A DNA stretch of 64,000 nucleotides from Fimbriosthenelais zetlandica (Eukaryota). Below the pieces are notes generated by a model that made no database searches, was not told the DNA's origin, and saw only the letters and a list, made by a program, of their open reading frames with translations. A program made the translations under genes and the position numbers. Of the stretch, positions 30,920 through 57,994 are shown one piece after another; position 1 is the stretch's first letter; every line of letters starts with the position of its first letter. The DNA lies in contig OZ365110.1 in NCBI GenBank assembly GCA_977030845.1, positions 53,816,001 to 53,880,000 on the forward strand, in the 5' to 3' direction.

Positions 30920-30984
30920 AGACATATCTTACACTATAATCATACATATCTTACACTATAATCAGACATATCTTACACTATAAT
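30920..30984. repeat. 22-bp tandem repeat x3 (agacatatcttacactataatc)
   Basis: Three consecutive near-identical units. Confidence 0.9.
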
Positions 30985-31891: not shown

Positions 31892-32243
31892 CTGTGTTAA
31901 CTAGTCATATAGTTCTTCTGCATAACCTGTAGGTTTCCGATTAACAGGTCGATCATTCCCTTTAACAGGCAATACCTATTAACAGGCTTACTTTGCTTAA
32001 CAGGCTATTTGAATGAGCCATTACATAACTGTTACGGATTCAAATATCCATTTATTGTCCAGGGACCAAAGGGTATTGGTAGGGAATTAATTCCACTCCA
32101 AAATCAATGAGGAAAAATCATAACGGTCCCCACTGGTTCACTAACTTGACATTTCATTAATGTGCTAAGTGGATTGGCCGGCTTGAGGTGTTAAATTCAA
32201 TTAGGTTCTATGTTCACTGGTACCACTCTGCTGCTGATCGACC

Positions 32244-32350
32244 TACAGTAGATTCTCACTAATGCGACCAACCTTGTTACTGAACTCATCTTGCTCATAT
32301 TGCCAGATAGTCGCTGTAGTGAGTACGTTTTAGTGGAGTTAAATCATACT
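32244..32350 (+). mobile_element. Tc1/mariner/pogo-like MITE fragment
   Basis: TAcagtagattctcactaatgcgacc...gatagtcgctgtagtgagt. A related fragment lies at about 49420-49530. Confidence 0.6.
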
Positions 32351-34556: not shown

Positions 34557-34810
34557 TTAAAGCGACTCTATCACTGATCTTTCCCTTGTATAGAGAAGAT
34601 GATTTTTAGTCACTATTGCACTGCTGGTAATTTTTGGAACCCCTTGCAATTTGACTGTGGCTTTGTAATTCCTATATGGCGAGTTCCTAGATCTTCTCAG
34701 CCAATACCCATCCAAGAAACTGGGTCAGCCATTGCAAATCTAGGTCAAACTGATATAGATTGCCTTTCAATAGGAGGTGTGGTCGTGCAACTTGACATAG
34801 ATTGTCTTGA
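34557..34810 (+). mobile_element. Kolobok-like family copy
   Basis: Starts ttaaagcgactctatcactgatc; core cagccaataccc...aatctaggtcaaactgatatagattg. Partial copies also at about 35780-35850 and 63749-63850. Confidence 0.6.
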
Positions 34811-35145
34811 AATGGGAAGTTTGGGTTGCATTAACAAAAGGCCCAGTTTGTCTTATACTTAATTTGTGATACACTTCCTGGAAATGCTGGTTTGATTAGG
34901 ACTCATTTATACATAATAAACATATTTAACCTATTCCTTACTTCGAAGAATACCTCTCTGAAAAGTGTGTGTGTTTAAGGTCACTGATATAAGCTGCAGG
35001 AAGAGGTGGGATCAAAGAGAACAGACTCAGGCAGAAGGTGCCACTTGGGTGCCTCTTTAGTTCACTCAAGTCCACTGGGATCTTCCTTAAATCTTTGGCC
35101 CCTCCCCAGCAACAATATTGTATATGGATCGCCATTTACTGATTA

Positions 35146-35469
35146 TACAGTGGGGCCTTTATAAAGCGACCACCCTCAGGACTGAAATAATTGTGGTCAC
35201 GTAGCAGGAAAATTGAGGCAGGTCTGATTATTGTGTGTGAATATTTGTTCATATTACGGATTTATCAGTTATTTCAGGACCGTCCGTAGGAAACATTTTG
35301 CTCTTCTTGAACGCCGGCAATGGTTCTTTTACATGTCTCTCATCTCAGAAAATTGGAAAATTAGTTTCCTGAGTATTGGTGTCTTATGTGTGTACACGTA
35401 TTTATGACGACTTAGTGGTCGGTAGATTGTCGCTTAATTGAGGTGGACGTTATGTGAGGAACTACTGTA
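35146..35469. mobile_element. Tc1/mariner/pogo-like MITE (TA-CAGT...ACTG-TA)
   Basis: Begins TAcagtggggcctttataaagcgaccacc and ends gaggtggacgttatgtgaggaactactgTA. Confidence 0.7.
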
Positions 35470-38263: not shown

Positions 38264-38490
38264 GGGGAGTTAGCTCAGATGGTAACAGAGTCAGGTTGGT
38301 TGACCGATGATCGAAGGGTCGGAGGTTCAATCCCCCGAGCTGTCGAAGGCATTTCCAATGCCTCCCTTCTCAGGGTGTTGGTGCATTGTACATGTTCTTG
38401 AGCACATCTACCTAGAAATTGCACAGAAGGCAATGCAGTAATGCACCTAGAACGAGCCCCTAGCTGAAAATCATACGAAAAGCTTGAGTA
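38264..38490 (+). mobile_element. tRNA-derived SINE
   Basis: A-box TAGCTCAGATGG (38271-38282) and B-box GGTTCAATCCC (38324-38334), then a body (ctcagggtgtt...tgtacatg...acagaaggca...gagccc...gaaaatca) shared with 9956-10133. Confidence 0.8.
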
Positions 38491-39586
38491 ATCAAGACTG
38501 TGAGCTGGTATTCATCCATAACAGGCTCTATAAAAATTCTAACTAAAAAAATGTTGTGTTGTGTATATCTGCCAAATGCTATGGGCTGTCAATCTCTAAG
38601 AGCAGACATCAGTGAAGGGTGTGCCCAGTATAATATGCCAGCTATTCACTTATGTGAGGTACTGTATAGTGAAGGGTGTACTCATTTATGAGAGCTATAA
38701 TTATTATTATAGGTGAATGAGGATGACTTCATCTTCATATGTGGTCCCTGTACAAGTGTTCAGAACTTATGATCGTGTTTCAAGTAACAGTGGTAAGTTG
38801 AGAAGCTGTCATCACTGATAATAACTCTGCCTTTATGATGATCCACTGAGTGTTCCCGGCCCATCATACCGCCCGTCATCCACTCACCATTTAGCCAATG
38901 ACGCCTTCCTCGATGAGCGATAATAGGCAACAGATTAGTGTTGGCACGGTGAAGATTGCCTATGGCACCTCAAAATGGAGCCGTTTTGGCTATCTCACTG
39001 AGACCTGTTACTTGAAGAATTTTCGGCTTGATTGGCCATTCTGAGGAAAGGAACAAGCATTTCAGGGAGTGCTAAAGGCAAAGGCCGAGTCACCGTTTTT
39101 GAAGGTCCCCAAACCTGGGCCACAGGTAGAGAGATCGGTGTAAATCTGATGATATTTTTGTGACCGAAGTGAAAATTGAATCACTTTGTCAGATTCTAAT
39201 CTTAGCGGAAATTTAAATGATACAGTCTTTCAGAATCTACAGATATAGTCAGACATACTTTGAGCAATTTCTAGCCTCATTGGTTTGGGGTACATGTATG
39301 CAGATGAGAGATGGTATTTGTATATGATTAATAGTAAGGTATGATTAGATTGATTAAGTCATGTGATTGCAGGGATCTATATGAGCAGCTCATGTTGAGA
39401 ATGTGAGCAGGCTGGTTAGTTTAGTTATGCTCCTCTCTCAGCGCTGTTTCTTCTGATAACAGTTGCTATGTTTGGGCGTTTATGTCAGAAGGTCTTATTA
39501 TGCTATACTGCTAATGCTCAAACCACATTATGTGACTATGGACTAATCAGGAATTTAGGACTACGGACCTGCAGAATTCATATAGA

Positions 39587-40245
39587 AGTTCCTCACACCC
39601 CACACACTTTTGACCTAAACTGGCAATTTACGAGACCATTTTTTCTTAACTAGGGATGGCGAAAGTGTTCCTTTTCCATAGGACCTACTACATTTACTAT
39701 GATTTGTAAGCATTCGTATGAAATATTGTGACTTTCTTATGCTGGTGTTTCATTACTGTACGAGTTATTTGGTTATTCAAAACCAAAAATAACAAGGTTT
39801 TTCAGGTGTCATTTGAAGTTATGTCGCCAACAAATCCATCAGATGCTGAATTGAACCATGTATCGTATTCTGAAACCTAGTCGTAGCAGTCGCAAGAAGT
39901 CTTAAAACACTTTGACCCTGCAATAGGCTGGCCAGCCCTTCTTGCTTGAGTGTTATTGCTTTCCCACTGTATTGAGACTGTCGGTATGGATTCATGATTG
40001 TCATTCCTAATGGGTCCATCACGATGATTGCAGAGATGTAGAAATGTTCCTAGTGCTCAGATTTTATTACCTGTTCAGCTCTCAATGACTCATGGTCCAA
40101 TGGTGGATTCGTTCGGGGGCTGGGGTGGCTGGAGTTCCTCACACCCCACACACTTTTGACCTAAACTGGCAATTTACGAGACCATTTTTTCTTAACTAGG
40201 GATGGCGAAAGTTTTCCTTTTCCATAGGACCTACTACATTTACTA
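39587..40245. repeat. 113-bp direct duplication (39587-39699 and 40133-40245)
   Basis: Copies agttcctcacacccc...ctacatttacta differ at one base (gtgttcc vs gttttcc); offset 546 bp. Confidence 0.93.
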
Positions 40246-42475
40246 GGCCTACATTCTCTTGAACACTCCCCCTTCTGGTACACGCCCCCCCTCCCTCCCC
40301 ACCCACTCCCACCCCCACGTGTCCTGCCCATGAAAATAGACACCCCGATCATGTAACTTCCTCACTCAAGTGGCTGCAGTCAGTAAAGAACATTTAGTTA
40401 ACTCATGTCTTGTAACATGCGCTCCGCCATCCATCACCCGCTCTGAATACCCAACTGGAAAAAGGAAGGGCGTAGGAGCATGCCAATAGTTGATGGCTCC
40501 CGCCGATACTCATACAGCCCCAGATTGTAGATAACCACTGCAAAAAGCCGCCATCTTTCCATATCTATATGGATCTGAAAGGAAGCTGACATGCCAATGG
40601 CGCTCGGCCCGAGTGGAAGCTGAAAATCTGGCCAATCAGCCCGCCAAATGGATGGGGATGAATGTGGCGGGAAGGAATAAATAAGAAAGTAGAATGGTGG
40701 GCAGATAGGGGTAATTGGCGACCTATGGCTGGGTGGGTTCAGCCTCAAAGGTGAATATTTCTCATCCTTCACGTTAACAGCCACCACTAAGCTGGCCTTC
40801 GCCCTGTTTTGATTTCTTTTTACCTGACTAATCTTAATTGGAATTTTCATCATCAGCTCCATACCTTGATCAGCCATCAATCACTCACAATTGGGTTCTG
40901 ACAAAAATGGTTATTTTTGGAAAGGTTTTTTTGTATTCAGACAATTTCCCTTTTGTTGTCTTTTGTCATCTAAGTTTTTTTTGGTATGAACCCTGAACCC
41001 AACCTGTGTTCCAAAGTCATGAAACAACGAATCAGCCAGATTATGTTAACTCGGCCTGGAATATATTGAACAGACCTTAATGCTAGGTGTCAGCCGGTCT
41101 TTAATCATTCTTCTAATGAAATCTCCTTTAGAAAGTTGTATCGTCACTTTGATTGGAATCTTGAAGCATTTTTTCACCAAAAGGATTTGATTGGGGACAT
41201 TTTGAAAACGTTAGAAACATTAAAATAAAGAAAAATACCTGAATCGCAAAGACTATAAGCTGAGGAAGATTGCGTGCGTTATACGTAATGTATCAGTATC
41301 ATTAGTAAGTAATTATGTAACATTGGATGGAAGTACATCTATAGACGTCATTAATGGTGACCTTTGACCCGCGGAGTGATATCTCCCGGAGGAATTAGGT
41401 ACGCGATGTCTACAGGCATTCCTAGCGCATCCCGCGTCACGCTCCTTTCTACCATAGACGTGAAAGACATTTTAGTAATAATTTATGTTATGTTTTAGTT
41501 TTAAAACTAAACTTTCATTATTGATCTATTATGACAGGCCCCTTTCTAGACCCCGGGAATCTCTGGAAATGTCCAGTTTTCCAGTACTTGAACATTCTGG
41601 CAAACCAGTCAAAAATTACTTTTAACACCACTATATATATACATAATTATATACTGACTAAAACAACCGCCTCACTATCTGACCACTAAATGTTCTGAAC
41701 CAAAGGTTTAGCCACTAATAATACATACTTGTAGGTCTACTCAGTAAATTGACCATCCTGCTGGCTATACGGCCATTTGGTTATGTCCCAAGGTGGTCAC
41801 ATTAGTAATGGGCAGCTACACTAGATTTTTCCGGATCTACCGCAAGTGCAGATAGAGTATCTATCCCCCTGTCCCAGCATGCAGGGAGGCCCTGTGGGGC
41901 CATGCTGGGGCCGATCATAATAGGCAAATGTAACTGCACTGACAAGGGCTTGCTGTTTCCGAGGGTTGCCTATTGGTCTCTAATTGGTGTGGCAGATATG
42001 GCCGTTGTATCTGTCAAAAAACTGCAACACTCGCAAGGCAAAGAACCCCAGTGTTCTGCATTCCATCGCCCATGATGAAGGGTGGATTAGTTATTTTGTG
42101 AGATGGGGTTGAGTGGGGCAGGCAGCAAGTCTAGCGTGGTAGTAGTAGTAGTGGATGAGTTTGGTGCCACACCTGGTGAACCTGCCCCAGGTGAATCATT
42201 CCACCTGTGTCTACCTATAAAATAGCATATCACCAGCCCCACCACCAGATACCATCCTATAGTGTACCACATCCTTCACCACCCAGCCTTAGTGGAGCCT
42301 CACTTAACCACCACCTCATTATGGCTTGCGTTGCACAACAATGCTTTAGCCTATGGTTGTACAATTTTGGAGTATGAAAGTGCTGTACAAGAAAATCTTC
42401 AATGGCGAGGATTGCCTTCACCGACCCTCGCCGTTGACGAGGTTCCTTGTACAACATGGGGCATACCAACCAATC

Positions 42476-42692
42476 TTAAGCCGGGACTACACTGCTGCGA
42501 TTTTGCTTGCGACACGTCTGCGACAAAGGTGATGCTTGTGAAGTTGTGTAAGAATACAATTTATAAATTGTGGTTCAAGTGTCTAAGGCCTTAAGGCCGT
42601 CCTCCAATGGTAAATTTATCATTGAAACACAAGCATCACCTTTGTCGCAGACGTGTCGCAAGCAAAATCGCAGCAGTGGAGAACAGGCTTAA
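42476..42692. mobile_element. TTAA-ended fold-back (palindromic) MITE-like element
   Basis: Begins TTAAGCC and ends GGCTTAA. Perfect 51-bp inverted repeat at 42490-42540 and 42628-42678, with an internal ggccttaaggcc junction. Confidence 0.85.
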
Positions 42693-45290
42693 CTGCATAA
42701 CCAATAGATGGTCAGAACCAAATGCTTTAACACCAGTAACACTGAAGGGACAATCTGACCACTATATGGCAGAAACATATATGCTTCATTATAAATAAGA
42801 CATACCCACTAAAACAACCATCACACTCTGTGATTTACTCTAAAATTTACTCAGAACCAAAGGATGAAACATTACTAAGATATACATGTACATGTATGGC
42901 CGACCCACTAAGACAAACCCACCTGATATGAATATCAAAATTCCCTTCAATATTACACAGGGCCACCCTAGAATAGGGGTAAGTATAGGATGATTTTTTT
43001 TCCACCTGGTATGTTGCCACCAAATGATCAGAACCATCCTATTATATGACCACAATTCGTTTGGTCCCAAGGGTTGTTGTATTAGTGAGACATTCCCTCT
43101 GAGAAACTTTCGTTTGAATATCAGCCATGAAATATTCTGATGATTGCCTTTTTCTGCTTCAAGTGGAATCGTGATTTCAGGAGAAAAAATGTGATTTTCA
43201 TGGGGAGAATGTCTGTGTTCTGGTCAGTGGTTAATGCCTTAATGGTGAACCTCTAAAGTTCATGGTCACTTCATCTGATTAGTGGTCAGTGGGCTTTAGG
43301 TAGGAAGGTCAGCTAGGGCTTCACGTCCACCGGTCAAGATGATGGTAGAAGTTTATATGATTTTTCTATACACATATTAAATATAACATATTATTTTAGT
43401 AGCACTGTTTGTGATAATTTAATTTTTATCTTAGTATAGCTGATGGTTTAAAAACCTACTTCAGCTGTACAAACTGTATGGGTAATCCAAATAAAGTAAA
43501 TCTGGGCCATCATCTTGGGCTTAGTGTTACAGATATAATATTATGTGTATGGTAAGCTTCCAATGTGAATGACGACTGGAATGCCTGTTTCTGCAGACAA
43601 ACTACTCCTGTAGACAATCACTGCTGCAGAGAAACTGCTCCTGCAGACAAGCTCCAGCTCCGACAATCTGCACCGCAAGGTTGCTTTCGTAACAAATCTC
43701 GATTCAGGATACAAGTTTAATTTAGGAAAGGCCTTTGTTGGCCGGAATGCACAGTTTTTGTTCATAGCGTATTAATGAAGTCTTTTTCTTTGGCGACCTT
43801 TTTAATTTTGCTCTCTCCCAATACCCAATTGTTTAATAATGATTTTCAGAGTAAAAACTGTCTTATTTCTCCCACGGTCACTGATGTATTAGGTTGTGTG
43901 ATGTTTAAATCATTTCCAGTCAGGACAAGTTTCTTCATTTCCTTCCGAACAACACACAGCAGAGTGTTTGCACACCGGAAGTCAGTCAGTCAAAGGAACA
44001 GGAGAAGAAGTGATGGGCTTAAGGCCCGTCTCCACTCAGCCATTTTCTCAGAGTACATCAGTTGGCCTGGCCAGTCATTGCGCATTTAGTCTCGCCATTG
44101 GCGATGTACATTGGTAGCAATCTGAGACATTACGATCAGATTCCACTAGAGCAATCTGCAACACCATATTACATTGCCAGATAGGCATAAAGCATAATAA
44201 TAACGTTGCTCACGCTTTACATTGTGAGAAAGTCAATCGCATTACCCAGGATCCTACTCAACCCCATCTTGGGCTACAATTTGCTTATGATTATCCAGGT
44301 GGTCCACGAGAGAACCTTGATGGCATTATCTTAAGACCCTTTAGCTTAGCACTTGACTTAAAGAAAATACACACAAAAAAGAAACAAAAACGGCTCAGTG
44401 GCTTAAGGAAGGATTAACTCCTAAGCCCTTCATCATGCAGCTTGAAGATTTGAAACTCCAAAATTGCGAGCATTTTTCCAATTAAAGTCCAATTAAAAAC
44501 CAACTTTGCACTCTCAGTCCGTCCTTATGCAGCCCTTATACAGAGCTTTGACGATCTATGTATATATATAATGTAACAATGCAGTGCCACGCTGGTTCCA
44601 CCCTGTGGTCGTACATTGCAAGCAGCCCGGAAATTACTACTGGGTTCAACATGAGCCATGTTTACGACTATTCGCCATGCTTCCTCCCGCACTCAATCAC
44701 TATATCAAGACTTTAAGGTCACTAGAACTTTGATAATTGGCAAAGTATTACCAGCCCGGCATAGGGCACAGTGTATTGTTCTACTCTGAGATGCGTATAT
44801 CGACGCGTCTTGATTAAATAGATCTGAACATGCAATCCATGGGGAAAATGACATCAGTTGTGTTACCGATCTATAGGGGGTCACCCAGGCCAGGCGAAAA
44901 AGAGGGGTAAGACAAAGGGAGCCGAGACAATTGCAGGGCCACAAGGGCAGGAGATGGACGATGTTTGTCTCCCAAGAAGAATTTTATTTTCTTCGCAGCT
45001 CAGACTGAAGGTGTATCATGTTTTGTTCGTGGAAAGATAAGAAGGATTTCCCCCCTTTCAGAAGAGCAGCTTTGGTATCTTACGCCCCATATCTACTGGG
45101 CCGTTCTCATACATTGGGCCGATGAGTCGGCCTGGACATTGGGCTAAATTCAGGCAAAGGCTTTGGGTTCTAGGAAGACCAGCCTTCTTTTCAAAATATA
45201 ACGAACTTGGCTCCAAGTATCTCTGTGAGGGTCTTGGTGTACGAAATGATATACTTGAGTAAGAAGGGTTCATGTAAAAATGATGCTTGT

Positions 45291-45518
45291 GTGTAAACAC
45301 AGTACTCCACTGATGCGATTTTACTTGCGACACTGCTGACAGTGCTGTGACAAAGGTGATGCTTGTGTCGCAAGGAAAAATGTTCCAGTGGAGGACGGCC
45401 TAAAGGCGGGACTCCACTTCTGCGATTGTGCTTGCGACACTATTGCGACAAAGGTGATGCTTGTGTCGCAGTGATGTCGCATGTAAAATCGCAGTGCTCA
45501 GTGGAGGACAGGCTTTAA
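45291..45518. mobile_element. Tandem (head-to-tail) pair of TTAA fold-back family monomers
   Basis: Two copies of ccact.ctgcgatt..cttgcgacact...acaaaggtgatgcttgtgtcgca...cagtggaggac.ggc, joined at ggcctaaaggc. Confidence 0.8.
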
Positions 45519-48399
45519 AGTTGTGGACACTTCAACCATAATATTGTCGTGACACAAGGATCACCTTGGTCGGAGCAAAAGTCGGGGCAGTGGAGTACCG
45601 GCTTTAGGGCTAGCTGATGAAGAATCGTTGTATCATTCTCTCCGCCTTAACAACTCCCCGATCCGCACACAGCTCATGGAAGGAGTGCGCTCATATGTGC
45701 GACACTCTTTTCAACACACTGCATTCCGTTTGACCAGCATTTTGTTGCTGGTCAGGGGAGCACCCCCATGTGGCTTTATAGATAATCCCCCGCGCACTTA
45801 AGTGCGCTCACTGATGCTGTGGGGAGCTCACTTCTTGATTAGTAACAAATTACTTAAATTGATAATTCAAATGAACCGAAAAACATACATAAATAGAAAA
45901 GAGACATTATGAAACCGATATATCGATTTTGGAAAGAAGAAAACGTTACTATATTAGTCTGACTTCAATCAGTCCCACATGCATGATGTTGTTCGTCCCT
46001 GCATCATGAGTTTGTTCACCCCAGCCGCATATTGTTGCTGCTCCTGTGCGCATGTGTTTCCGCACACATGCTGAGTACATGATTTCGTAAAGCTTCCTTT
46101 TGTTTCGCCCCCACCCACCTCCTGCTCCTCGGACTAATTATAGTTAGCCTCATATCGCTACCCACAGTGCATTGCAGTTTTTAAACTTCACTTCTCTAAC
46201 GGCTGTGTTGGAGTTTGGACATGGAGTACATGGATCTGAATTCTTCAGGTAAGTAATTCTATATTTAATATCCCTTTAGAAAGTCCAATTCCTTCCAACA
46301 TACAATTCCCATCCTTTTCTTCCTAAGTAATGCTGTATTACACCACCACTTCACATTTATGAAAGTTTATAAGGGCTATAATCTGTGAAATATTGCGAGT
46401 GTTGCGAGTGCACATTCCACCCCGCTACTATGGGTGTATGAGGACCGTCCTCTCAGAATAGATTGTGACTATTACATGTACTAAACACTAGCACTTTACC
46501 ATATCTTTGCATTGATTTAATCTGGAATCTAAATTTCTTGTACTGTCAACTTCATCATGTACATTTTAAATGGAACAGGTATGATGCGGGATGAAATAGG
46601 AGGAGACGAGACTAGAATGATTCTACCATGCCGGCGTGGGACATAGGCCTATACTCAACTTTACTTAGCGTGAGATATTTGGTAAGCCTTACATGAACAT
46701 GTACATCATATACTATACTTACTTATATTGCAGCTCTATTTCATTTATCATAAAGCTTTTTATAAATTTGTTACACTAAATGATTCTTTTGTTGATATAT
46801 TTAACTCCAGTTGGTAACATTAAGATGGATAGGTGGGCCTAATGAATGGGGTGGCTGGAACATGACAAAATCATTTTCTCCATGTAGCCTACATAAATAT
46901 GTGCATGATAGGCTTGTGTTATTATACTTAAAGCACTCGTATATACGGTTTCCAAGTTGTATCAAATATAATTTAGTTCAGACATAGCTAGTCCATCTGC
47001 ATAATGCAAAATTAATTGTGCAATGAAGTAAAAGCTAAGTTACTATTGTGTTTTAGGCGTGAAAGCCTGTAAGAGGTTTCACTTGGGTCACACCTGTCAT
47101 GATACATCCAACGCTGCAACACCTTCCCCGAGAGTGTGGACCCAAAAAGTCTGAGTGTGAGGTGAGGATATTTCGGCCTTAATAATATACATGATATCAT
47201 GCCAATTTTGAGTTGTTTTTTTTTGTAAAATAAATATACATGTAACATAGTATATGATATTGTATTGAATCTTGTTATAGGAGTTATGACTTGATCTATC
47301 CATCCCGATAAGTGTTAAAATATTGCTTTATGATTTCAGCGCTAACCAATCCCTCTCTGCAGTCACCACACAAACCAAACTGGTTGGGCAACAATTGAGC
47401 ACACACCATGCTAGATATTATATCATCATCACCATAATATAATTTATATAATTGTGTAACAATCTTGGGTCTAAACAGCCATAATTGTACTTCTGATAAA
47501 AAAGTTTCCAGCTAAAATGTTTCCTAACCCAAATCTGATAATTACATCGACCCTGCATGTAGCTTAATGTATAAAATCCTTAGGCATTTAGGAACCGCAT
47601 ATTATTTAATTATTACGGTAGTACATACATACATACATGCCATTAATATTCCAAATATCTATGATATTTTTATGCATTATCAACCATCATTGAGAACCGA
47701 CCATACTACATAATTATTACATTCATTGTCACCATTCTATAATTCCAAAATGCTAAAGTTAAAGAAATTAACAATATGGTTTGCTATGTACGGTATGTTC
47801 TACAGTAAAGTAACTGGTCAGTGACCAACCCAGCATGTCTATTATAATAGTTGGTCGCATATGTGCCACTAGTGGCGCCTTGTAGTTATGTCATGGGAAG
47901 GGAAACAAAGGGAGGCTTTGTTTAGCGTCGGTGGGGAGAGGGGTGTCTGAGACTGACCCATGGCGAGTCGGCTTTCTTGGGATGCGGGATTGGTCTTAAA
48001 TGATAATTATGCTTGAATGTGAAAAATATATGTGACAAATAATTATCATACGTCACTTATATCTACCGACGCATATTATGCTAGATATTAATAATGATTA
48101 ATAGAGATGATAATATGTAAGCGCGACAATATATTCCCTAGAGCTTTATAATTGACAAGAAACATTTGTATGAACTCTGTATTTTGATGTCTATGTTTGG
48201 TGTGGTTTCATTGTGATTGTAAAATCTGTCTCTCATGAAATTGTAAATAAAAGTGAAATGCAATTGAATCCTTGCCTTATATTTATATATAAATGAAAGG
48301 AATAATTCTGGTTAATAATTTATGATTAAGCATAATAAAGCATAAAGAGCATTAATTAACAATGGGGTGTACGTTCCTGTACCCCCACCCCCGCGTCTA

Positions 48400-48720
48400 T
48401 ATTACATAACAGTCTGTGTTGTGATTGGTCAGTGAAGATTAGCCACTGTCCAATCACATGCTATTAGGCGGCCGCGCTCAAGAGCGCGCTCATTTGCGGC
48501 ACTGGTGCGCGTCAGACATCAAAGGGGATGGGGGAAAGGTGTGAGGTGTGATGTTAGGCCCACCGCGCTACGAGCGCGGAGTGTGTAGAAACATGGACGC
48601 GCTTTTTTCAGTGCGGCTTGAGCGCGCACATGTTGCTGCAAAACGTGTTGACAAGTCGCTGGTGAGGGAAGTTTCAATTCGCGCAAAATGTTGTGTTTAC
48701 CAATCGGCAAAGTGAAACGT
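48400..48720. promoter_or_regulatory. CpG-rich, palindrome-rich island with inverted CCAAT boxes
   Basis: Stem 48420-48434 / 48444-48458 (14/15) containing ATTGG and CCAAT; NotI site at 48468; GC hairpins at 48473-48488 and 48563-48579. Confidence 0.35.
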
Positions 48721-51700
48721 ATGTGTCGATCGGGTCAAGCAACATTCAACAACCTGACAACAGGTTTGTGATAAGAGGGGGAAGGCAGGCTTTATTAGTG
48801 GGTAATCCATCGCTGAGGTCACCTGGTGTTAGCAGTTGACAATCAATACCCTGTATTAAACCCTTTCCCACCCCATACACTGTCTACCAATTCACCCCCT
48901 CAGCCTAATTGGGTCCTACCCCAGCCTATCAGCTTCACTCCCTTCTTGCCACGCCCTAACTAGATTGCAGCCATTGATTGGAGGGGAGAAGGGTGAACTG
49001 CGCATGCTCGAGGTCGTTAGGGATGGGTCTGGATGGGTTTATCCCTCACCAGGCCCTGTCCCTAGGGTACATTTAGCGGGAGAAAACTTGACTCTCTCAA
49101 CTAAAAGCTAGATTGTATTGGGCTTGTAGGAAACAGTAAATGGTCGCTAGTCAACAGATGGTGGTCTGCATCAGGTATACATTACCTTTTATGACAAACA
49201 ATTGGTGCGAGGGAGAAATGTATTATCTGTAATTATGACGAATATGGTTGGGACTAGAGATACACTAAATCTGACATTATGTTGTAAACAACTTCATTGA
49301 AGCTTCGATCCAGAGGCTAGAATCTATAAGCTGAGTTCAGCTCTCAGGTCTGTCTGTCTCAGCCTACCTGATGAAATTCACTGGTCTATCAGAAGTATAC
49401 CAAAGTGTACCAAAAAATCTACTGTAGAGTCGAATCTCTAATCTCCAATGCGACCGCATTCGGTCCTGAGCATTTAGTGGTCACATAGTGGGATTTTCGA
49501 TTTCGTGAGGTGGTCGTTATGAGAAATATTTTGATTCTTGTAGTCATCAAAATGGCTGAGTCGTAAATATAGATGACCTGGTATTCACCACGAGCTGTCC
49601 TTCACTGACCTGATTTACGAAACATCAAGAAAGAAAATGTGTTTTGTTGAATGATATGTGATCATGGCAGGTATGATAATTGTATACACACTACTACTGA
49701 AACAGGTAGAAAGATTAAGATAACAGGTGGAAATTGTTGGAGAAAGTTTGTTCATAAACCACGCTTGAAAATCCATATGGTGTAATGCACCATCTAAAAG
49801 GTCTCAAAGGTGCAACCTTTTAGATTGATGCATTGATGAGTTAGGTGTGGTACTCTATGCTCTTTGAAATATAATGATCCTTCAGCATTAGTTTATTATA
49901 GATTTCATCATTTTGTTCAAACAGGATTTTTTTCTATATACACATACTCAACACTGCTTAGGCTTCCCTATGTCTATGAGTTCACACATCATGAGCTATA
50001 GGTGTCAGAAATCTGAGCAGTTTTCCTGGTGTAAATTAGTTTATATGTCAGTTGGTCTGTCAATATACGTAGTAGACAAGTCACTGGCTTGTATCAAGAC
50101 AAAGACCAAATTGCATAGGTTTTAGCAACAGTCTTAGCAAGTTTTTTCTGGTTTTAAATATATTGTGAAACATCCATTTTATTGTTGGTGAAATACATGT
50201 GCAATACTGCTAATACCATACTGAAGCGAAATACAAAAAGTGAAATGATTTACCTTTTATGCTGTGCAGTAATATTGAGGGAAGATGGAGGTGGCCTACA
50301 AGGCTGTACTGGGCCAGAATAGCTCTTAATACTGGCTCTGAATCCGCCTGCCTTGCATTAAGTGCTCAAAGTAAACAGTTAATGGGGGATCTTCCCCAGT
50401 CATCCATACCATTATCCAGCTCCTTTCAGCCCTGGAAAGCTCTAGAGTTTCTGGAAGAGACATCTCTGATCGAATTGGCTCGGTGCAGGCTTGGGATTGG
50501 TTCCAGGACAGTGAGAGAGGCAGGCTTGAAAGAAAGCTCCAGTCTGGGCATTAATGGCTGCAGACATGGGTCTCAGACCAAGTGGGGTGTCACATCACAA
50601 CGAATTTTTCTACGCCTTTTTCTTTTTCTTTTCATTCCCCATCTTGATGAGGAGAGCTGGTTGAACCCTAGTTCTGCCACTCTTGATGACAGCATTGGTA
50701 CCATGCGCATGCCCACCTCGACACGCCCTTACGCAAATATCAGTTTATTGTACAACGATGTTGTTACCTATGGTTGTACAACACCCTGTCTGAGACTCTC
50801 ACTACCTTGTACTATACCACATTCAGTGTGGTGAAGGCCGAGCGAGAGGTCGCCAAACCTATCAACGGTGGTCCACCTAAATAATGGGCACAATACAAGA
50901 TCAATAAAGTGATGATAGACAATTGATCTGCACACTGTGCAGCAAGGACAGTTAACTTTGAATCCTTTAATCAAATGGTTTCTGCAATCACATATGATAA
51001 TTCTAAAAATACTAAAGATGCAAAGATGCATTGTGTGAATTGCCTTTGGTCTGGATTCTCATCTAAACGTACCTTTAGTATGTCTGTGGCAGGGAGCATA
51101 GTATAGTAACCTACATAGTGCCACGACCCCAACTGACACTTATACACATATCGCATGTCTGACGACCATAGGTCAACCCCCCAGGCCCCTACCGAAGAAA
51201 AAGACTAGCCACCCTGCAGTACAATGAATACTATCGATCGAAAGCGATTGAATAAATGACTAATTGAACACTGAAGTATTCAATACTCCACTTGGTCAGT
51301 CATCCAATTTGTGGCCCACTTTTTATGAGTCCACTTCCCTGACTCTAGCCATTCTGTTTAGAACCTTGGCGTACATATCCATTTAGAAGTGTTCATAAAA
51401 TAAATCTGGATTGTATATAACTGACTCGAGGGTATTTAAAATAGTTTGCATGGCCTTCTATGCGTATCGATGAAATCACTCAACAGCGATTGAAATTCAC
51501 AAGCATATTACTCTGACCCGGACTTGTTGTCAAATAAAGCGACAGAAATATCTAGGTATGGCATTTTGTATAACATGCGCTGATTTTTGTCATAGAGAGC
51601 TCCAAATGAACAGCATTAATAACCTATATACCAGGTACATGCATTTGTCTCGTTGCCGTTGGATTAGATGAAAAGCTAGAAAGGCTTGGATGGATCCATG

Positions 51701-51963
51701 AAGCACTAGTGGCTGGTAAATGCTTCACACAAAGTGTATAAAAGATGCCCCATGTATGCTGTCTGGATAAAAGTATTTTACTGGCACGTTTGCATGGGCG
51801 AACATATTAAAACACTGTGGGTACCTGCCATTCATCCAACAGAGCAATAACATCCTCCACTGCAGCGCTCTAAGGCATAGACCCACTACTGTAACTCGGA
51901 CGTTTTGCTTTGTTGCTGTCTCTTTTACAGCTCCACTATCATATGTGATGAGCTTTGATGCAC

Positions 51964-52130
51964 TTAAGGATAATCTATGTCAGTTTGACGTAGATTTGCT
52001 TTGTTTGACCCGTATTCTAGGTTGGGCATTGGCTGGGAGGTGCTTAGGGCTGCCTAAGAGTGAGCATTGGAGCAGAGTTGAACTAAAATAATAACTACAT
52101 GAAAAATTCAGCAATATAAAGCCACTTTAA
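51964..52130 (-). mobile_element. Kolobok-like family copy, reverse orientation
   Basis: aatctatgtcagtttgacgtagatt...ctaggttgggcattggctgggag...aaagccactttaa is the reverse complement of the family core and 5' terminus. Confidence 0.65.
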
Positions 52131-53719
52131 TATATTCTACTTTAATGATACTTCTTTTTATAATGTATAACTTTATTTTGGAACCTGACTATTGAATATG
52201 TGGGTTGGAGTCTAAAATCCCTAGTTAGGTATGAATGGAATTAACCTATCACAAAAATGAAAGTAGATCTAGGCCTTTTTGTTAGAACTTTACTATCCCA
52301 GGGTCATTGCTGTAAACGTGGGGAATTGTGCTGACACAACCACGCCCACTACCCCTCTGTATATCACACAGTCAACCGGCGACCTTTGCCCACACCCAGC
52401 CTCCACATGGGGCCTACTGCCTCCGCTGTCGACCAGAACTGATGTCACATTGTGCCTTTTCATGATAGGATGAACACAAACTGGGCATTTCTGGCACAGC
52501 ACTACATCACTGCTCGATATTCTGTGGCATGCTGTCCGGTGAATTTTTTTGTCGGGCAGAATGGAAAAGAACCTTTGCTTGTTATTATTGTCTGAATGCC
52601 TAATGTTATCGGGCCGTCTCTGTCGTATACTATTGTTGTTCTCCTGTCCCTAACCATTCCTCAGCCAGACACAACCTTTTGTTTCTTCTCCGTCCCTTTC
52701 TATTCTATCACTCGTCAATCCAGGCCTTCTCAGTTCAGCCTGCAGTTCAAAACCATGCACCCATGTACATAATCTGTGCATCGATTCGCACCGTCCAGTG
52801 TCATTATATATGAGCTTTTATATTGCATATTTGCCCAGAATAGAAACATTCTGCAGTTTCCTGAGTCGGGGACTGGCATTATACAGTACCATTTAGATGT
52901 CAATGCAGTATTCTTAAGGGATGCACCCACTATTACAATAGACAACCCAGTTAAGATAGGTTATTTAAGATAGACGAAACACATAAGATGTTACTGAAAT
53001 CCACATACAAAGGAATTAAATGTCGTCAAATGTATTCCGATTGGACAGATTTTTCCCACAAAACGAACTTTAGGTGTTTTCTTTTTCCCTATCGCATAAC
53101 CGAGCTTAAATGCTCTCTTGGTGGTCTGTCGTGATAGTGGGTGCCAGGCTTTAGGAGTGGAGCAAGGAGAACGTGGGGAGGAGGACATCAGCACTGAGAT
53201 GGCTGTGGGATGCTGGGACTATCTAGAGCTGTTAGCACTGTGCAACAAGCATGAATGGCACAGTCAGTTATAGGTCAGTGTGGAGCTACTCTCACAGGAC
53301 CAGAACAGGTAAAGGCTTCTCTATGGGAGGCCAGACGGCGTCTCTATGGGAGGCCAGACGTCTGATAACAATCCTGTCAACCTGTGTGTCTGACTGGACC
53401 ATTTAAATACTGCTGCCCCATCCCATTCACTGTCCCGACACCTGATGTTCTTCTGTGCAGATCGATCATCTCAATTTACTTTCATTAAAAAAAAATTGAG
53501 TAATTATTGCATTGAAGTGGAGACCCGTCTCTGTAGTCATGTCGTCAATATTAATTTACCTTCATTTAAACCCTTGTTGAATGTATATGACTGGTTAAAT
53601 AGTAATTCATTTAACTTATATTTCACCTGGACATATGGAAGCATATGGAAAAGTCAGTGATACCTGTGCAGGTCACACATACAGAGCTCTATCAACTATC
53701 ATGTACATTTGTGCATATC

Positions 53720-53927
53720 TAAGGCCAGTACTCCACTGCTGCGATTTTGCTTGGGACACTACTGCGACAAAGGTGACGCTTGTGTTACACTAAAATGTAT
53801 CAATTGTGATTGTGGTGACCAAGGCCTTGTGGCCATCCTCAAGTGGATTTTTTTCATTACAACGCAAGCATCACCTTTGTCGCAGTTGCGTCGCAAGCAA
53901 AATCGCAGCAATGGAGTACACGTTTAA
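53720..53927. mobile_element. Second inverted-dimer copy of the TTAA fold-back family
   Basis: taaggccagtactccactgctgcgattttgctt...gcgacaaaggtga, then gcatcacctttgtcgc...aagcaaaatcgcagcaatggagtac; same layout as 42476-42692. Confidence 0.8.
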
Positions 53928-54720
53928 AACAAGGCATGTCCGCGATTGGATGACATACAGTATAACCCATATCCCCTTACCTGCTTATTAATCGTGACTC
54001 AAATATAGACCCCATTCAACTACAACAACTATAGCACCTGATACCTTATAAAAAGTGACATAAAAATATTGAGATATATGTCATGAAATGTTTTGCTACT
54101 ATCTCTTCTTCCCCTGTGGATATCCGGAAAACTGATATCCTGTGTCGGAACAGTGGAAGTATCCTGTGAGATGGGGTGGTCTTTGATTGTAGGTGAAAGA
54201 CTTCTTGTTATTCCAACCAGAAGACTTTTTCTGTATCTGCATTATGAATACTATCAGTGATAGAGACTGTAACATTTGGAGTGCCATGATCCAGGCCTCA
54301 GTTGCCTGAGGGCTGATAGTGGATTGTTACTGTCTGTAGAATATCACTGTAAACAGTGCAATACACCGTTACTCCTCACATCAGATGGCAAAGTGCTTCA
54401 GGGAATGTGCTTAGTACAATATATTATAATGTACTGGTGTTTCCTCACAGTCCAAATATGTTTTGAAGATGATGACAGTAGAGAGGTGCATTATAGAATG
54501 TCAATACAGGTGGCAATGCAATATATTTATGACAGGACGATGACATTGCGAATGATGTAAACTTGTGCGAATAATGTCGAAACTTAACTACTGGCTAACA
54601 TAACTGCATTAAGTGGATGAAGTGGGCGAGGTGTCCTTGTTCACCCAGTATTTAAGAAAAATATTTTAGAAAATTGTCAGGTTGTACCTCAGTCCTCCTT
54701 CTGTCTTAATTTTTACATTT

Positions 54721-54956
54721 TAAGCCCGTTCTACACTGCACCGATATGGGGCCCGATTTCATGATCTTAACGGTCTCATTAGATCAAATTGAAATCAGAT
54801 TAATAATCGGCATAATGTGGATGAAGATAAGATCATGATCGGGATGATTCTCTCATAGATCTGTACATGTCAGATCTGATGCGACTGGGGGCAGATCTTG
54901 CATGTCAGATTTTAATCTGATCAGATCATAAATCGGTACAGTGTAGAACGCGCTTA
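54721..54956. mobile_element. 236-bp MITE with 25-bp TIRs (TAAG...CTTA termini)
   Basis: 5' TAAGCCCGTTCTACACTGCACCGAT vs reverse complement of the 3' end TAAGCGCGTTCTACACTGTACCGAT (23/25). The interior is rich in GATC/AGATC/TCAGAT. Confidence 0.88.
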
Positions 54957-55027
54957 TGTGGTTATAACAATTAATATTTGAATTTTCTGAAATTTAATAT
55001 CTTTCTATGAACACTGTGTGAATTGCC

Positions 55028-55063
55028 TTTAATGTAAAATCTCTTCTTCACTTGCAGGTAAGT
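55028..55063 (+). promoter_or_regulatory. Candidate recursive splice site (ratchet point, YnCAG|GTAAGT)
   Basis: tttaat (branch-like)...ctcttcttcacttgCAG|GTAAGT. AG at 55056-55057, GTAAGT at 55058-55063. No other AG dinucleotide in 54947-55055. Confidence 0.6.
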
Positions 55064-57994
55064 TGTCTGATGTGTAAGCTGAAAGGTAACAAGTTTTGAC
55101 CTTTTTGATTTTGATTTCTCCTTTAGATATAGTTTGAACCGCATGGTGCTAGCATCGATTTAGACTAACTCTATATGGCACCTACTGTGAAGACATAAAA
55201 GGACTATATTGCATTTTGTAATATATCCTTTTAAAATGTCCATCCACAATTTCATTAAACTGGATATCTCCAATCATGTTTTCAACCAAATTTCTATCAA
55301 GATGAATTAATATGAACTTAATGATTATAGTACACGTATTTTACCTATATTTTATACATATATTTTACCTGCATATTTTATCAATATTTCATTTCCTTAT
55401 TCCCCTGATTTTATTTCATTTTTTTTTTCATGAAAAGACTTTGAGAAATTGAATTTTAAAACTAAATTAAACTATTCTATTTATAAAAATAACAAATTTA
55501 CTCACTTTTTCTTATGATCTGAAGTGAATGTTTGTAAATTGATATATCAATTTTCTACTCGTCACCACTCAACCATATATGTGTTTATGATAATATTCTA
55601 CGCCATTATTATCATGATAATAATGTTATCTAGAATTTCAGATATCCGTGTAGCTACTAAAGTAAATCTTGTCTTCCATGTTGCTCCTGTAAATTATTTA
55701 CACTGGAATACCTTGTCAGTCTCTTTACAGTCATTGAATTTTCTTCATTTTTCTAAATTCATCCCCTTATCCGGCCACTTGAATAATCGTCAGAACCAGA
55801 TCTGACCCGCTAAAAATACAATCTGTTGAATACATTGTCAGAACCACATGCAGTTAAAACAAAGTGTGAGTACCACGACCCGACCACTTAATGGTTGGAA
55901 ACAAAATTAATTTTAAAACAGAACTTTTATACATGTACACCTACCATACTCGCTAAAGTGACCATCCCACTACACAATCTCAGTCCAAATAGTGACTCCA
56001 CTGTCGATCCATTTAATAACCCGTCAATGCCTGTTTTACGATCACTAGGTATTACAGTGTAAGCCGATATAGTGTGTCCATTGTATCTTGCATGTTGTGA
56101 TGTCATGACCTATCCTCACCTATTGACAGTATATATTGACATATATATAGTCTCCACCCATCTGCTTTAGCTTTTATAATCCAACCTGCCAGTTAGCTTT
56201 TGCTATTTGACTTTTTCCACCTTATTCTCATCTTCTAGTTAGACTTTTTTTAATTCCCTTTTTATTATATATTCAGTAGCATCTTTTTCACTCACCATTT
56301 CATTTCTCAAATTTATACTTGTTCGCAAAAAAAAAAAAGGAAATTTTCTACTGATTGAAAATTTATGACATTTTTCAGTACATATGATTATGAGGTTTTG
56401 CTGTTTATTCAACGCCTTTCTTCTCTCTCCTCTCTCCTTCAAGTGATCAGGACTGGTTATCTGATTCTAGCCTTCAGTGACTGCACGTATTTAGTCTAAT
56501 TAATACCAAATAATGGGAATTGGTAGGGTGAAAACAACGCATTTCCCCAGTATGTACAACAAGCGCATGTCAAGATTTCCAAAACCCATCAAATCACAAC
56601 GACCCTTCTCTGACCTTTGCTACCCAGCCAATCACGTTTAAGAGAACCACAAAGCCTACTTCCTATTGGTCAGAATTACCCAACATTCAATGTTTTGACC
56701 CAGATTTGTTGCTCAGACACGAGGCATTATTTATTCTTTTATTTGGCCCTTGTCATTGTATGGCTAGTGTGTGCACTTTGCCACTTCGTCCAGACCCAAT
56801 CACATGGAAAACCCCTTCAAACTCCCGGCTAAAGTCATGAGCACTTTGCTTTATTATATCCATCAACCCGCATACTTTCTAGCAAGGACAAAATGTTCCT
56901 ATGGGCAATGTTTCAGATAAAGACTCGGAGTTTCTCGGACCTGTCCATATGTGACAATTATGCAGCAGATGATGATGTGACGATTTTGGTGGACCTTGAA
57001 TACTTGGTCATATGCTTGATAGTCAAAACCAACTCCATATAAATCAACCAATTATGCCAAAATTACTTAGGAAGAGTGACTCTCATGTGCCCAGTGATGG
57101 TGATTTAACCTGGATACTATAAAGTGCTCTGGATTAGCTAGGATGTCAAGAGAGTCCTGCCCAACCTCCACACTACCTAGACCTCATAGTTGTGGATCCT
57201 GCTGAATATATGTACAAGATTAGGGTTACCATTGGACAGACTATAACTGACAACTTCTGTTAGCTCTGCTCAATTTTGGTTTATCTTTGATAATTTTTTT
57301 TAAATTTTAGATTATGATCTTCTCTGGTCCTTCTTTAAGTTTTTTTTGCAGGGTGCGGGTCAAAAAATGTAGCTGCCTTTTTAGAATATCAGCTCCTATT
57401 CCTGCCTCTATTTGGGATTCTGGAATTTTCTCTTGGGGGCTTATGTTTATGTGCAATGCATTTTTATTTGCCTTTGCAAATTTAAACTTTGTAAAAGATT
57501 GAAAAGAAAATTGAAATTTTGAAAGTGGAATGTATCGTAAATTGTCTAGGTATTCATTGTCGGATTATTGGAAGTCTTTTGGAAGTTTTATTTTGGTGTA
57601 GATTTGTTTTCAAGTTAAGAACACTATTATTTTGATTGTCATTTAAGGGGATTGTGTAAATATTTCTACATGAAGTGTCTGGTACCTCCCTGTCTCTCTG
57701 CTTACCTCAGTGTGCTCGCCTGACCCCAAGGTCTGTCATGTCAGTGTAAAAAGCTAATTCTCTTTTCCATCCTTGTCCAACTGGAATCCCCCATCATATA
57801 TTTCACCGTGTCAACGTCATATTCTACGACAAGATTCTGGTGCCCTCCACCACCCAGGGAGGTGATGAGCACCTCTGTAAAGTTCTATTACCATGGTGAC
57901 GCTTGAAGTTGTCAAGGTCAACCAGATGCCAGCTGTCATGTCGTATGATATGCTGTCACACTGTAGTTTATGAGGAAGTGCTGTGTTTTTACAG

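What the first reader, a model, noticed from the sequence alone, without database searches (positions are those of the whole stretch)
54947..55063. Candidate recursive-splicing ratchet point in the giant Kv2 intron
Seen in sequence: a branch-like TTTAAT, a pyrimidine tract (ctcttcttcactt), CAG, and immediately the consensus donor GTAAGT, after 109 nt with no AG dinucleotide. An ordinary exon ending here would have to be over 110 nt of AT/T-rich sequence with no closer acceptor. Established: AG|GT zero-length exons subdivide very long introns in Drosophila and in long vertebrate neuronal genes. Inference: this invertebrate Kv2 removes its >57-kb intron stepwise. I am not aware of a recursive site described for Kv2, or of recursive splicing being well studied in non-insect invertebrates. 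The site looks stronger than the real acceptor 2.9 kb downstream.
Basis: partly seen in the sequence, partly recalled or inferred. Interest (0 to 1): 0.8.

Follow-up and report, generated by a model that had tools for sequence, protein, structure and literature searches.

The report
Conserved recursive splice site, Kv2 intron
The 58-kb intron of a Kv2/Shab potassium-channel gene in an unidentified non-arthropod invertebrate holds a fly-style "ratchet point" (an intron end fused directly to an intron start), and because a related species keeps it in the same place about 3 kb before the next exon, the intron is very probably removed in two steps, although no RNA data could be examined.

Summary
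CAG|GTAAGT sits at 55055-55063 (+), behind a pyrimidine tract and a 109-nt AG-free run. It lies on the sense strand of a 58,393-nt phase-0 intron between the T1 exon, which lies just upstream of the window, and the S1-S6 exon (57995 onward) of a Kv2/Shab gene.

- **Strength of the site.** It is the best combined acceptor+donor site on either strand of the window (24.6 bits; next best 20.0). Random 58-kb sequences reached this score in 0-1% of trials.
- **Genome-wide excess.** Acceptor and donor motifs are joined with zero spacer 8-17 times more often than with 1- or 3-nt spacers. The joined sites form same-strand chains 15-55 kb apart. The narrower pattern class that contains this site has 15 members, against 0-4 in each offset control.
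- **Conservation (decisive).** In a relative with 96% identical Kv2 core protein and an otherwise almost unalignable intron, the best site in 10 kb (28.2 bits) lies about 3,050 nt before exon 2; here the distance is 2,937 nt. Both CAG|GTAAGTTG and a downstream TGAAAG|GTAACA are identical, which defines a 28/32-nt out-of-frame cryptic exon, as at Drosophila ratchet points.

No RNA runs were listed, so use of the site is unproven. Its position, 95% of the way into the intron, is atypical. The scan has noted ratchet-point chains elsewhere in this genome. This is a new member of a known kind.

The parts
1..55057 (+). First recursive segment of the Kv2 intron. It starts 399 nt upstream of the window at G000:C10:53815602 and is 55,456 nt in all.
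   Evidence: T1 exon and donor AGG|GTGAGT located; window offset given.
54947..55055 (+). AG-free run of 109 nt upstream of the ratchet AG. It is incidental: only 36 nt in the relative, and bounded upstream by a MITE.
55028..55033 (+). Branch-point-like TTTAAT, with the likely branch A at 55032 (position -26).
   Evidence: Fly ratchet branch points lie at -36 to -21 (10.1101/006163). The motif carries little information and this is an inference only.
55040..55053 (+). Pyrimidine tract tctcttcttcactt, with TT at -6/-5.
   Evidence: 3' splice site score 11.8 bits. TT at -5/-6 is found in 99.5% of fly ratchet points.
55055..55065 (+). Ratchet-point core CAG|GTAAGTTG, identical in the relative. 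The splice junction lies between 55057 and 55058.
55058..55085 (+). Predicted cryptic RS-exon of 28 nt (32 nt in the relative). It is out of frame and its body is poorly conserved.
55080..55091 (+). Conserved TGAAAG|GTAACA, the weaker donor of the cryptic RS-exon (6.3 bits).
   Evidence: it is the only donor of at least 5 bits within 340 nt downstream. (12-mer shared with the relative; 1 of 2000 shuffles reach this).
55058..57994 (+). Second and last recursive segment, 2,937 nt, single copy in the genome.
57974..57994 (+). Real acceptor of exon 2 (gctgtgtttttacAG|), 3' splice site score 5.0 bits.
   Evidence: its flank is conserved in L001
57995..59059 (+). Kv2/Shab exon 2 (S1 to S6 and the proximal C-terminus). 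The likely donor is CCCAG|GTGAGA at 59059/59060.

Best explanation
55057|55058 is a Drosophila-type intronic ratchet point: a zero-nucleotide recursive splice site with a cryptic RS-exon, in the 58.4-kb intron between the T1 exon and the S1-S6 exon of a Kv2/Shab gene. The proposed course is as follows; the sequence features are shown, but their use in splicing is inferred. Once RNA polymerase has passed 55.5 kb, the strong acceptor (branch A near 55032, pyrimidine tract, CAG) is recognised together with the weak donor AAG|GTAACA 28 nt downstream, by exon definition. Exon 1 (...CCAGG) is then joined to 55058 and the first 55,456 nt leave as a lariat. The join recreates a donor, AGG|GTAAGT, that scores the same as the original AGG|GTGAGT and higher than the cryptic-exon donor. 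That recreated donor is used next and is spliced to the exon-2 acceptor 2,937 nt away, so nothing of the site remains in the mRNA. If the weaker donor were used instead, a 28-nt insert would shift the frame and should send the mRNA to nonsense-mediated decay.
For: Anatomy: the acceptor and donor are juxtaposed on the gene's sense strand, with TT at -5/-6, a branch-like A at -26 and a GTAAGT donor. The regenerated donor scores 10.4 bits, the same as the original donor, against 6.3 bits for the cryptic-exon donor. Outlier status: at 24.6 bits it is the top of 493 AGGT sites in the window and was reached in at most 1.3% of simulated introns. Genome level: YYYYYYTTNYAG|GTAAGT occurs 101 times with no spacer, against 6 with a 1-nt spacer and 13 with a 3-nt spacer. 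Among the listed sites, 15 adjacent pairs lie within 60 kb; all 15 are on the same strand and none on opposite strands, where about 1.35 pairs in total are expected at random (my own arithmetic). The class containing this site, YYYYYYRYTTNYAG|GTAAGT, has 15 members against 3, 3, 4 and 0 at spacers of 1 to 4 nt. Other members of that class sit inside same-strand chains, for example C10:24175730. Conservation: in L042/L043 (96% identical Kv2 core) the best site on either strand of 10 kb is ...ctctttaCAG|GTAAGTTG at 28.2 bits, with the next best at 16.0. It lies about 3,050 nt before the acceptor, and the order ratchet point, conserved block, acceptor is the same in both species. CAGGTAAGTTG and TGAAAGGTAACA are identical while the flanks are not. 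Fit to published rules: fly recursive introns are 11-133 kb, segments are 2.6-63.6 kb and the motifs are conserved. Fly ratchet points have short, out-of-frame, poorly conserved cryptic RS-exons whose donor is weaker than the ratchet donor (PMC8605326).
Against: There is no RNA evidence of any kind: no sequencing run was listed, so junction reads, a saw-tooth profile and lariats are all untested. The site lies 95% of the way along the intron, whereas single fly recursive sites tend toward the midpoint (PMC6110457); the 2.9-kb last segment is near the lower end of the fly range. A 28-nt exon is short for exon definition. Conservation rests on one relative, seen as two haplotigs. More distant relatives show no such site in the 1.7-3.7 kb available, and one has an intron of only 3.2 kb. 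The sense-versus-antisense test on 176 kb of other Kv introns had no power (9 against 9 at the low threshold, 1 against 0 at the high). My scoring matrices are rough values written from memory.
Confidence: 0.8

Rival explanations
1. The site is a regulated poison micro-exon rather than a silent ratchet. 55058-55085 (28 nt) would be an expressed recursive exon that is included in some cells, shifting the frame so as to turn Kv2 output down. The GTAAGT at its 5' end would decide between skipping and inclusion, as at vertebrate RS-exons.
For: Both ends of the 28/32-nt unit are conserved and it is out of frame in both species. The distance to exon 2 is held at about 3 kb rather than dividing the intron evenly. 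Expressed RS-exons are known in flies and mammals.
Against: The ratchet donor (10.4-12.8 bits) is much stronger than the cryptic-exon donor (6.3 bits), which in flies predicts complete skipping. The exon body is not conserved and differs in length by 4 nt. No transcript data are available.
Confidence: 0.1
2. The site is a chance juxtaposition of acceptor-like and donor-like sequence with no role, or at most a rarely used cryptic site.
For: The bare 9-mer is within chance for a 64-kb window. The first-stage scan read very many windows, so some top-1% sites are expected. A repeat family in this genome carries a look-alike, CTTTCCTCACAG|GTAAGT.
Against: The region is single copy. A relative whose intron is otherwise unalignable has the same core, the same downstream donor and the same distance to exon 2. 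The class count of 15 stands against 0-4 in the offset controls.
Confidence: 0.05
3. The site is the donor of an unannotated upstream exon, for example an alternative first exon or a MITE-derived exon ending at 55057. On this reading the pyrimidine tract is incidental.
For: CAG|GTAAGT is a perfect donor, and a first exon needs no acceptor. The MITE 100 nt upstream could supply a promoter or an exon start.
Against: No acceptor of at least 4 bits lies within 400 nt upstream, and all three frames carry stop codons. A transcript starting here would lack T1. The MITE has no aligned counterpart in the relative, which still keeps the acceptor half (15.4 bits) and the downstream donor. Neither of those is needed for a plain donor.
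Confidence: 0.03

Closest known systems
Drosophila intronic ratchet points (zero-nucleotide recursive splice sites; Ubx, kuz, luna and more than 500 others)
   Same: A strong pyrimidine tract with TT at -5/-6 followed by YAG|GTAAGT on the sense strand of an intron longer than 11 kb. The core is conserved while the flanks are diverged. There is a short, out-of-frame cryptic RS-exon with a weaker downstream donor, and the host is a neuronal gene.
   Different: The host animal is not an arthropod by the Kv2 tree. This is a single site at 95% of the intron, with a 2.9-kb last segment, whereas single fly sites tend toward the midpoint. The cryptic exon is 28-32 nt against about 50 nt in flies. There are no junction, saw-tooth or lariat data.
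Vertebrate recursive exons (RS-exons in long neuronal genes; Sibley et al. 2015, as summarised in PMC8605326)
   Same: Exon definition through a downstream donor; competition between the regenerated donor and the RS-exon donor; inclusion would cause a frameshift.
   Different: In vertebrates most RS-exons are expressed or repressed by the exon junction complex, and only about nine fully silent sites were noted definitively. The motif here, and its genome-wide excess, look like the fly type. No KCNB1 recursive site was found in the searched library.
Computed enrichment of ratchet sites in long introns of non-Drosophila invertebrates (Shepard et al. 2009, PMC2773006)
   Same: Sense-strand excess of combined acceptor/donor sites in introns over 50 kb: 8.2-fold in sea urchin, 4- to more than 10-fold in bee, beetle and mosquito. 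The zero-spacer excess found here is of the same order.
   Different: That work is statistical only and names no individual conserved site. Here a single site is shown to be conserved together with its cryptic exon.
Other ratchet-point chains noted by this scan in the same genome (for example s1-188344, s1-207628, s1-207629)
   Same: Same motif, same genome, giant introns. One of them was also reported as kept in a related species.
   Different: Those are mostly chains of 2-4 sites spaced 10-27 kb apart. This is a solitary site close to the 3' exon. They are unchecked notes and I did not verify them individually.

Membership tests
Drosophila-type intronic ratchet point (zero-nucleotide recursive splice site) | A 3' splice site and a 5' splice site juxtaposed around AG|GT, on the sense strand of the host intron | tested here: met
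   CAG|GTAAGT at 55055-63 on the + strand; the gene is on the + strand
Drosophila-type intronic ratchet point (zero-nucleotide recursive splice site) | Very strong acceptor half, with TT at -5/-6 (99.5% of fly sites) | tested here: met
   TT at -6/-5. 3' splice site score 11.8 bits against 5.0 for the real acceptor. One purine at -8 interrupts the tract.
Drosophila-type intronic ratchet point (zero-nucleotide recursive splice site) | Joining to the upstream exon regenerates a competent donor | tested here: met
   AGG|GTAAGT scores 10.4 bits, equal to the native AGG|GTGAGT. This is a sequence prediction only.
Drosophila-type intronic ratchet point (zero-nucleotide recursive splice site) | Host intron very long (fly range 11-133 kb) | tested here: met
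   58,393 nt
Drosophila-type intronic ratchet point (zero-nucleotide recursive splice site) | The core motif is conserved in related species while the flanking intron is not | tested here: met
   L042/L043 share CAGGTAAGTTG at a matching distance to exon 2. Only one other block of about 150 nt aligns in the last 3 kb. This rests on one relative only.
Drosophila-type intronic ratchet point (zero-nucleotide recursive splice site) | Short cryptic RS-exon with a weaker downstream donor, usually out of frame and poorly conserved inside | tested here: met
   28 nt here and 32 nt in the relative. The donor TGAAAG|GTAACA is identical in both, at 6.3 bits against 10.4-12.8. The exon body differs.
Drosophila-type intronic ratchet point (zero-nucleotide recursive splice site) | Exon-to-ratchet junction reads, saw-tooth read density and lariats of the segments | not testable with these tools
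   The look-up of sequencing runs listed no run in either search, so read laying could not be used.
Drosophila-type intronic ratchet point (zero-nucleotide recursive splice site) | Typical placement: single sites lie near the intron midpoint, and segments are mostly 9-18 kb (a tendency, not strictly defining) | tested here: not met
   Segments are 55,456 and 2,937 nt, with the site at 95% of the intron. Both lengths fall inside the published fly range of 2,596-63,580 nt.
Vertebrate-type expressed RS-exon | The exon following the recursive site appears in some mRNAs or is repressed by the exon junction complex | not testable with these tools
   No transcript data. Relative donor strengths predict skipping.

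The most novel reading that the evidence does not exclude
The site may not be a length-divider. It could instead be a docking point held about 3 kb before exon 2 in two species, whatever lies upstream, together with a conserved 28-32-nt out-of-frame cryptic exon. Two things would follow. First, it would hand the 5' exon to the acceptor over a short last intron and could serve as a poison-exon switch that sets Kv2 channel dosage in neurons. Second, together with the genome-wide chains, it would show that the fly-type ratchet/RS-exon mechanism is older than arthropods, being shared with the mollusc/annelid side of the animal tree.
Probability: 0.2. Interest if true: 0.7.

Novelty: new member of a known kind. 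Interest (0 to 1): 0.5.

Why it matters
Recursive splicing at zero-length exons has been shown experimentally mainly in Drosophila and, in a different form, in vertebrates. Outside insects the evidence is mostly statistical. This site is a single, precisely defined ratchet point, with its cryptic exon conserved between two species of a non-arthropod lineage, in a well-known neuronal channel gene. It gives a concrete RT-PCR or RNA-seq target for testing whether the fly mechanism operates in this branch of animals. It also warns gene annotators that the 28-nt unit is not a coding exon. Its unusual, conserved placement 3 kb before the acceptor bears on what ratchet points are for: even subdivision of the intron, or accuracy and hand-over at the 3' end.

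Tried and rejected
- **RNA evidence.** Two sequencing-run searches, on exon 2 alone and on 54000-59083, listed no run. Read laying was therefore never used.
- **Sense versus antisense test.** On 176 kb of long introns from other Kv genes the counts were 9:9, 4:5, 1:1 and 1:0 at thresholds of 16, 18, 20 and 22 bits.
- **Reversed-pattern controls.** These proved noisy, ranging from 1 to 13 for the same class, so I relied on spacer-offset controls instead.
- **More distant relatives.** None shows a ratchet-like site: L017/L018 (intron only about 3.2 kb), L019 (1.7 kb available), L020/L021 (3.7 kb available). Nothing in them aligns to 54947-55100. L001 has only 426 nt of intron. The contig of P0003 could not be read.
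- **Intron length in the relative L042/L043.** This was not determined. No T1 exon lies within 10 kb upstream, and the T1 search did not return its contig.
- **Relic duplicated T1 exon.** I considered that the donor might be left over from a duplicated T1 exon. This is rejected: there is no T1 similarity in the window apart from exon 2.
- **Ordinary or coding cassette exon ending at 55057.** Rejected: there are stop codons in all frames and no acceptor within 400 nt.
- **The second CAGGTAAGT at 46246.** It is repeat-borne and has a weak acceptor half.
- **Conserved block 56408-56564.** Rfam and a consensus fold gave nothing.
- **Literature.** No paper in the searched library links recursive splicing with Shab or KCNB1. 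The fly S2-cell supplements do not list Shab, which is uninformative because that data set comes from S2 cultured cells, not neurons. The supplements of Duff et al. are not held. A search for work on molluscs, annelids and similar groups returned nothing relevant.

Full report
**1. The observation**

The previous AG is at 54945-46, so 109 nt are AG-free. Only 24 of 3,598 AG-to-AG gaps in the window are that long.

**2. Gene context**

- The ORF at 57983-59083 is an Ion_trans domain. Its best solved relative is KCNB1 (Kv2.1), residues 188-470, at E 1e-134.
- Its acceptor is tttttacAG|GTATTG at 57993-94.
- The T1 exon lies just outside the window at G000:C10:53815071-53815601 and ends ...AAAGCAGCCAGG|GTGAGT.
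- The window starts at C10:53816001, so the intron is 58,393 nt, phase 0, at the same protein position at which the match to human Kv2.1 begins (residue 188).
- The candidate splits the intron into 55,456 nt and 2,937 nt.
- A Kv2 tree puts the protein outside the arthropod clade (100/100), with bivalve and annelid sequences, in a group of unnamed organisms. Core identity to all named phyla is about 77-81%. The animal is therefore not an insect; its phylum remains unknown.

**3. Is it more than chance?**

The bare motif is not. CAGGTAAGT occurs twice against 0.5 expected, and 8 of 100 shuffles reach 2. A short-tract version is found once against 0.52 expected. The other copy, at 46246, is repeat-borne: an identical stretch lies in an intron on contig C11.

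The whole site is unusual. I scored positions -20 to +1 of the acceptor and -3 to +6 of the donor with rough generic matrices written from memory, so the scores are approximate.

| Site | Acceptor (bits) | Donor (bits) | Total (bits) |
|---|---|---|---|
| 55056 | 11.8 | 12.8 | 24.6 |
| Next best, + strand | | | 20.0 |
| Best, - strand | | | 15.9 |
| Real acceptor at 57993 | 5.0 | | |

55056 is the top of 493 AGGT sites in the window. Simulated 58.4-kb sequences reached 24.6 bits in 0 of 150 (order-1 Markov) and 2 of 150 (order-3) trials.

An ordinary exon ending at 55057 is unlikely. The nearest acceptors of at least 4 bits are 409 nt or more upstream, and all three frames carry stop codons.

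**4. Surroundings**

- A 236-bp element with 25-nt terminal inverted repeats occupies 54721-54956. It is a high-copy MITE: at least 1,883 first-look candidates, with the 40 scored copies 91-94% identical.
- The MITE supplies the AG that bounds the AG-free run. Without it the run would be 127 nt.
- The site itself and the whole last segment, 54950-57990, are single copy in the genome.

**5. Does this genome use ratchet points at all?**

No annotation is available, so I used two annotation-free tests on the whole 447-Mb assembly.

Spacer test:

| Pattern | Spacer 0 | Spacer 1 | Spacer 2 | Spacer 3 | Spacer 4 |
|---|---|---|---|---|---|
| YYYYYYTTNYAG + GTAAGT | 101 | 6 | not run | 13 | not run |
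| YYYYYYRYTTNYAG + GTAAGT (class containing this site) | 15 | 3 | 3 | 4 | 0 |

By my own rough estimate, real exon donors that happen to follow a pyrimidine-rich exon end can account for only a few of the zero-spacer matches.

Strand clustering: among the listed zero-spacer sites of the first pattern, 15 adjacent pairs lie within 60 kb of each other. All 15 are on the same strand and none on opposite strands. About 1.35 pairs in total would be expected from random placement (my own arithmetic). Examples:
- C10:24137700 / 24163302 / 24190469 / 24209059 (-)
- C21:25394380 / 25412742 / 25436310 (+)
- C21:26069933 / 26094807 / 26124235 (+)

Other members of the class containing this site fall inside such chains: C10:24175730(-), and C25:23842976(+) next to C25:23815683(+).

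One caution: a repeat family carrying CTTTCCTCACAG|GTAAGT inflates looser patterns.

A direct sense-versus-antisense count on 176 kb of long introns from other Kv genes had too little power. It did turn up one mid-intron site of 23.2 bits on the sense strand of a 57.8-kb intron on C19.

Earlier notes of this scan report similar chains elsewhere in this genome. I treated these as leads only.

**6. Conservation**

Most retrievable relatives were uninformative.
- L001 has only 426 nt of intron.
- L019 has 1.7 kb of intron and L020/L021 have 3.7 kb, with no strong site.
- In L017/L018 the T1 exon lies only about 3.2 kb before exon 2, and there is no ratchet-like site.

A second member of the P0003 cluster (P0122) led to L042/L043, two haplotigs from ENA ERZ25767047 whose Kv2 core is 96% identical to the window's. 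In that relative:
- No T1 exon lies within the 10 kb upstream of exon 2.
- The best acceptor+donor site on either strand is ...ttttaccctttctctttaCAG|GTAAGTTG, at 15.4 + 12.8 = 28.2 bits, with the next best at 16.0.
- It lies about 3,050 nt before the acceptor, compared with 2,937 nt here.
- By blastn, only exon 2 and one block (window 56408-56564 against L042 8175-8317, 74% identical) align. The order ratchet point, block, acceptor is the same in both species.

Aligning the two sites shows two identical islands in otherwise dissimilar sequence. The first is CAG|GTAAGTTG. The second is TGAAAG|GTAACA, starting at position +22 here and +26 in the relative. Only 1 of 2,000 shuffles gives a shared 12-mer anywhere in +9 to +150.

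The second island is exactly the only decent donor downstream of the site: AAG|GTAACA at 55086, 6.3 bits. It defines a cryptic exon of 28 nt here and 32 nt in the relative. That exon is out of frame in both species and its interior is unconserved.

This matches the anatomy described for Drosophila ratchet points (PMC8605326): ultraconserved acceptor|donor motifs; a short, poorly conserved, usually out-of-frame cryptic RS-exon; and a ratchet donor stronger than the RS-exon donor.

**7. Mechanism (inferred)**

1. The acceptor is recognised together with the cryptic donor.
2. Exon 1 is ligated to 55058.
3. The regenerated AGG|GTAAGT (10.4 bits, equal to the native donor) outcompetes the 6.3-bit donor.
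4. The regenerated donor is spliced to 57995.

**8. What does not fit**

- In flies, single recursive sites lie nearer the intron midpoint than chance (PMC6110457). Fly segments average 9-18 kb, with a range of 2,596-63,580 nt.
- Here the last segment is 2.9 kb, and that distance is itself conserved. The site may therefore serve hand-over to the 3' exon, or a poison-exon switch, rather than even subdivision.
- The "weak real acceptor" rationale does not carry over: the relative's acceptor is strong, at 14.0 bits.
- The long AG-free run is not conserved (36 nt in the relative).
- No RNA data could be examined.

**9. Comparison and novelty**

- This is the known fly-type ratchet point. Computed sense-strand enrichment already exists for other insects and for sea urchin (PMC2773006).
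- No paper in the searched library links recursive splicing with Shab or KCNB1.
- The scan has noted ratchet chains on other pieces of this genome.
- This is therefore a new member of a known kind. What stands out is conservation of both the core and the cryptic-exon donor in a non-arthropod, and the unusual placement close to the 3' exon.

**10. Verdict**

I put the probability that this is a functional recursive splice site at about 0.8. Interest is 0.5.

Noticed in passing
window 54721-54956: A MITE-like element of 236 bp with 25-nt terminal inverted repeats (92% complementary). It has at least 1,883 first-look candidates in the genome, and the 40 scored copies are 91-94% identical. It ends 100 nt upstream of the ratchet AG.
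   Followed up: partly
window 56408-56564 (matches L042:8175-8317): The only other conserved block in the last intron segment, 74-82% identical to the relative. It begins with a long pyrimidine run followed by CAG. It has indels and stop codons, no Rfam match and no convincing shared fold. It may be an intronic regulatory element or a non-coding exon.
   Followed up: partly
L029:2366 (G000:C19:17305735, + strand): A ratchet-like site, tttttcttttccattgTAG|GTAAGT (23.2 bits, TT at -6/-5), on the sense strand at 56% of a 57.8-kb intron. That intron lies between the S1-S5 exon and the pore exon of another Kv gene.
   Followed up: no
G000:C10:24137700-24209059 (-); C21:25394380-25436310 (+); C21:26069933-26124235 (+); C35:180028-317197 (-): Same-strand chains of 3-5 YAG|GTAAGT sites with T-rich tracts, spaced 12-50 kb apart. 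They look like ratchet-point chains in giant introns. The C35 sites share an identical 18-mer and might be segmental copies.
   Followed up: partly
genome-wide, e.g. G000:C1:1147891; window 46246-46254: Two repeat families carry ratchet look-alikes. CTTTCCTCACAG|GTAAGT makes up about half of the Y8-NYAG|GTAAGT matches. ...gaattcttCAG|GTAAGTAA occurs at window 46246 and again, identical, at L039:3137 on the opposite strand. Scans that use the motif alone will pick these up.
   Followed up: partly
L017:6839-10001 and L018:7268-10001: In a more distant relative (85% identical Kv2 core) the T1 exon lies only about 3.2 kb before exon 2 and there is no ratchet-like site. The giant size of this intron therefore varies among related lineages.
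   Followed up: partly
window 57993-58000 and 59058-59065: The real exon-2 acceptor is itself an AG|GT (cag|GTATTG), but its donor half is poor (4.8 bits). The likely exon-2 donor is CCCAG|GTGAGA at 59059/59060, 24 nt before the stop codon of the raw ORF.
   Followed up: no
window 4449-4778 and 11977-12516: Minisatellite-like tandem repeats that read open in several frames (for example repeated FHQFLHH and ISAPVSVYICPCFSVYLPLFQC units) inside the intron. They are probably non-coding repeats.
   Followed up: no
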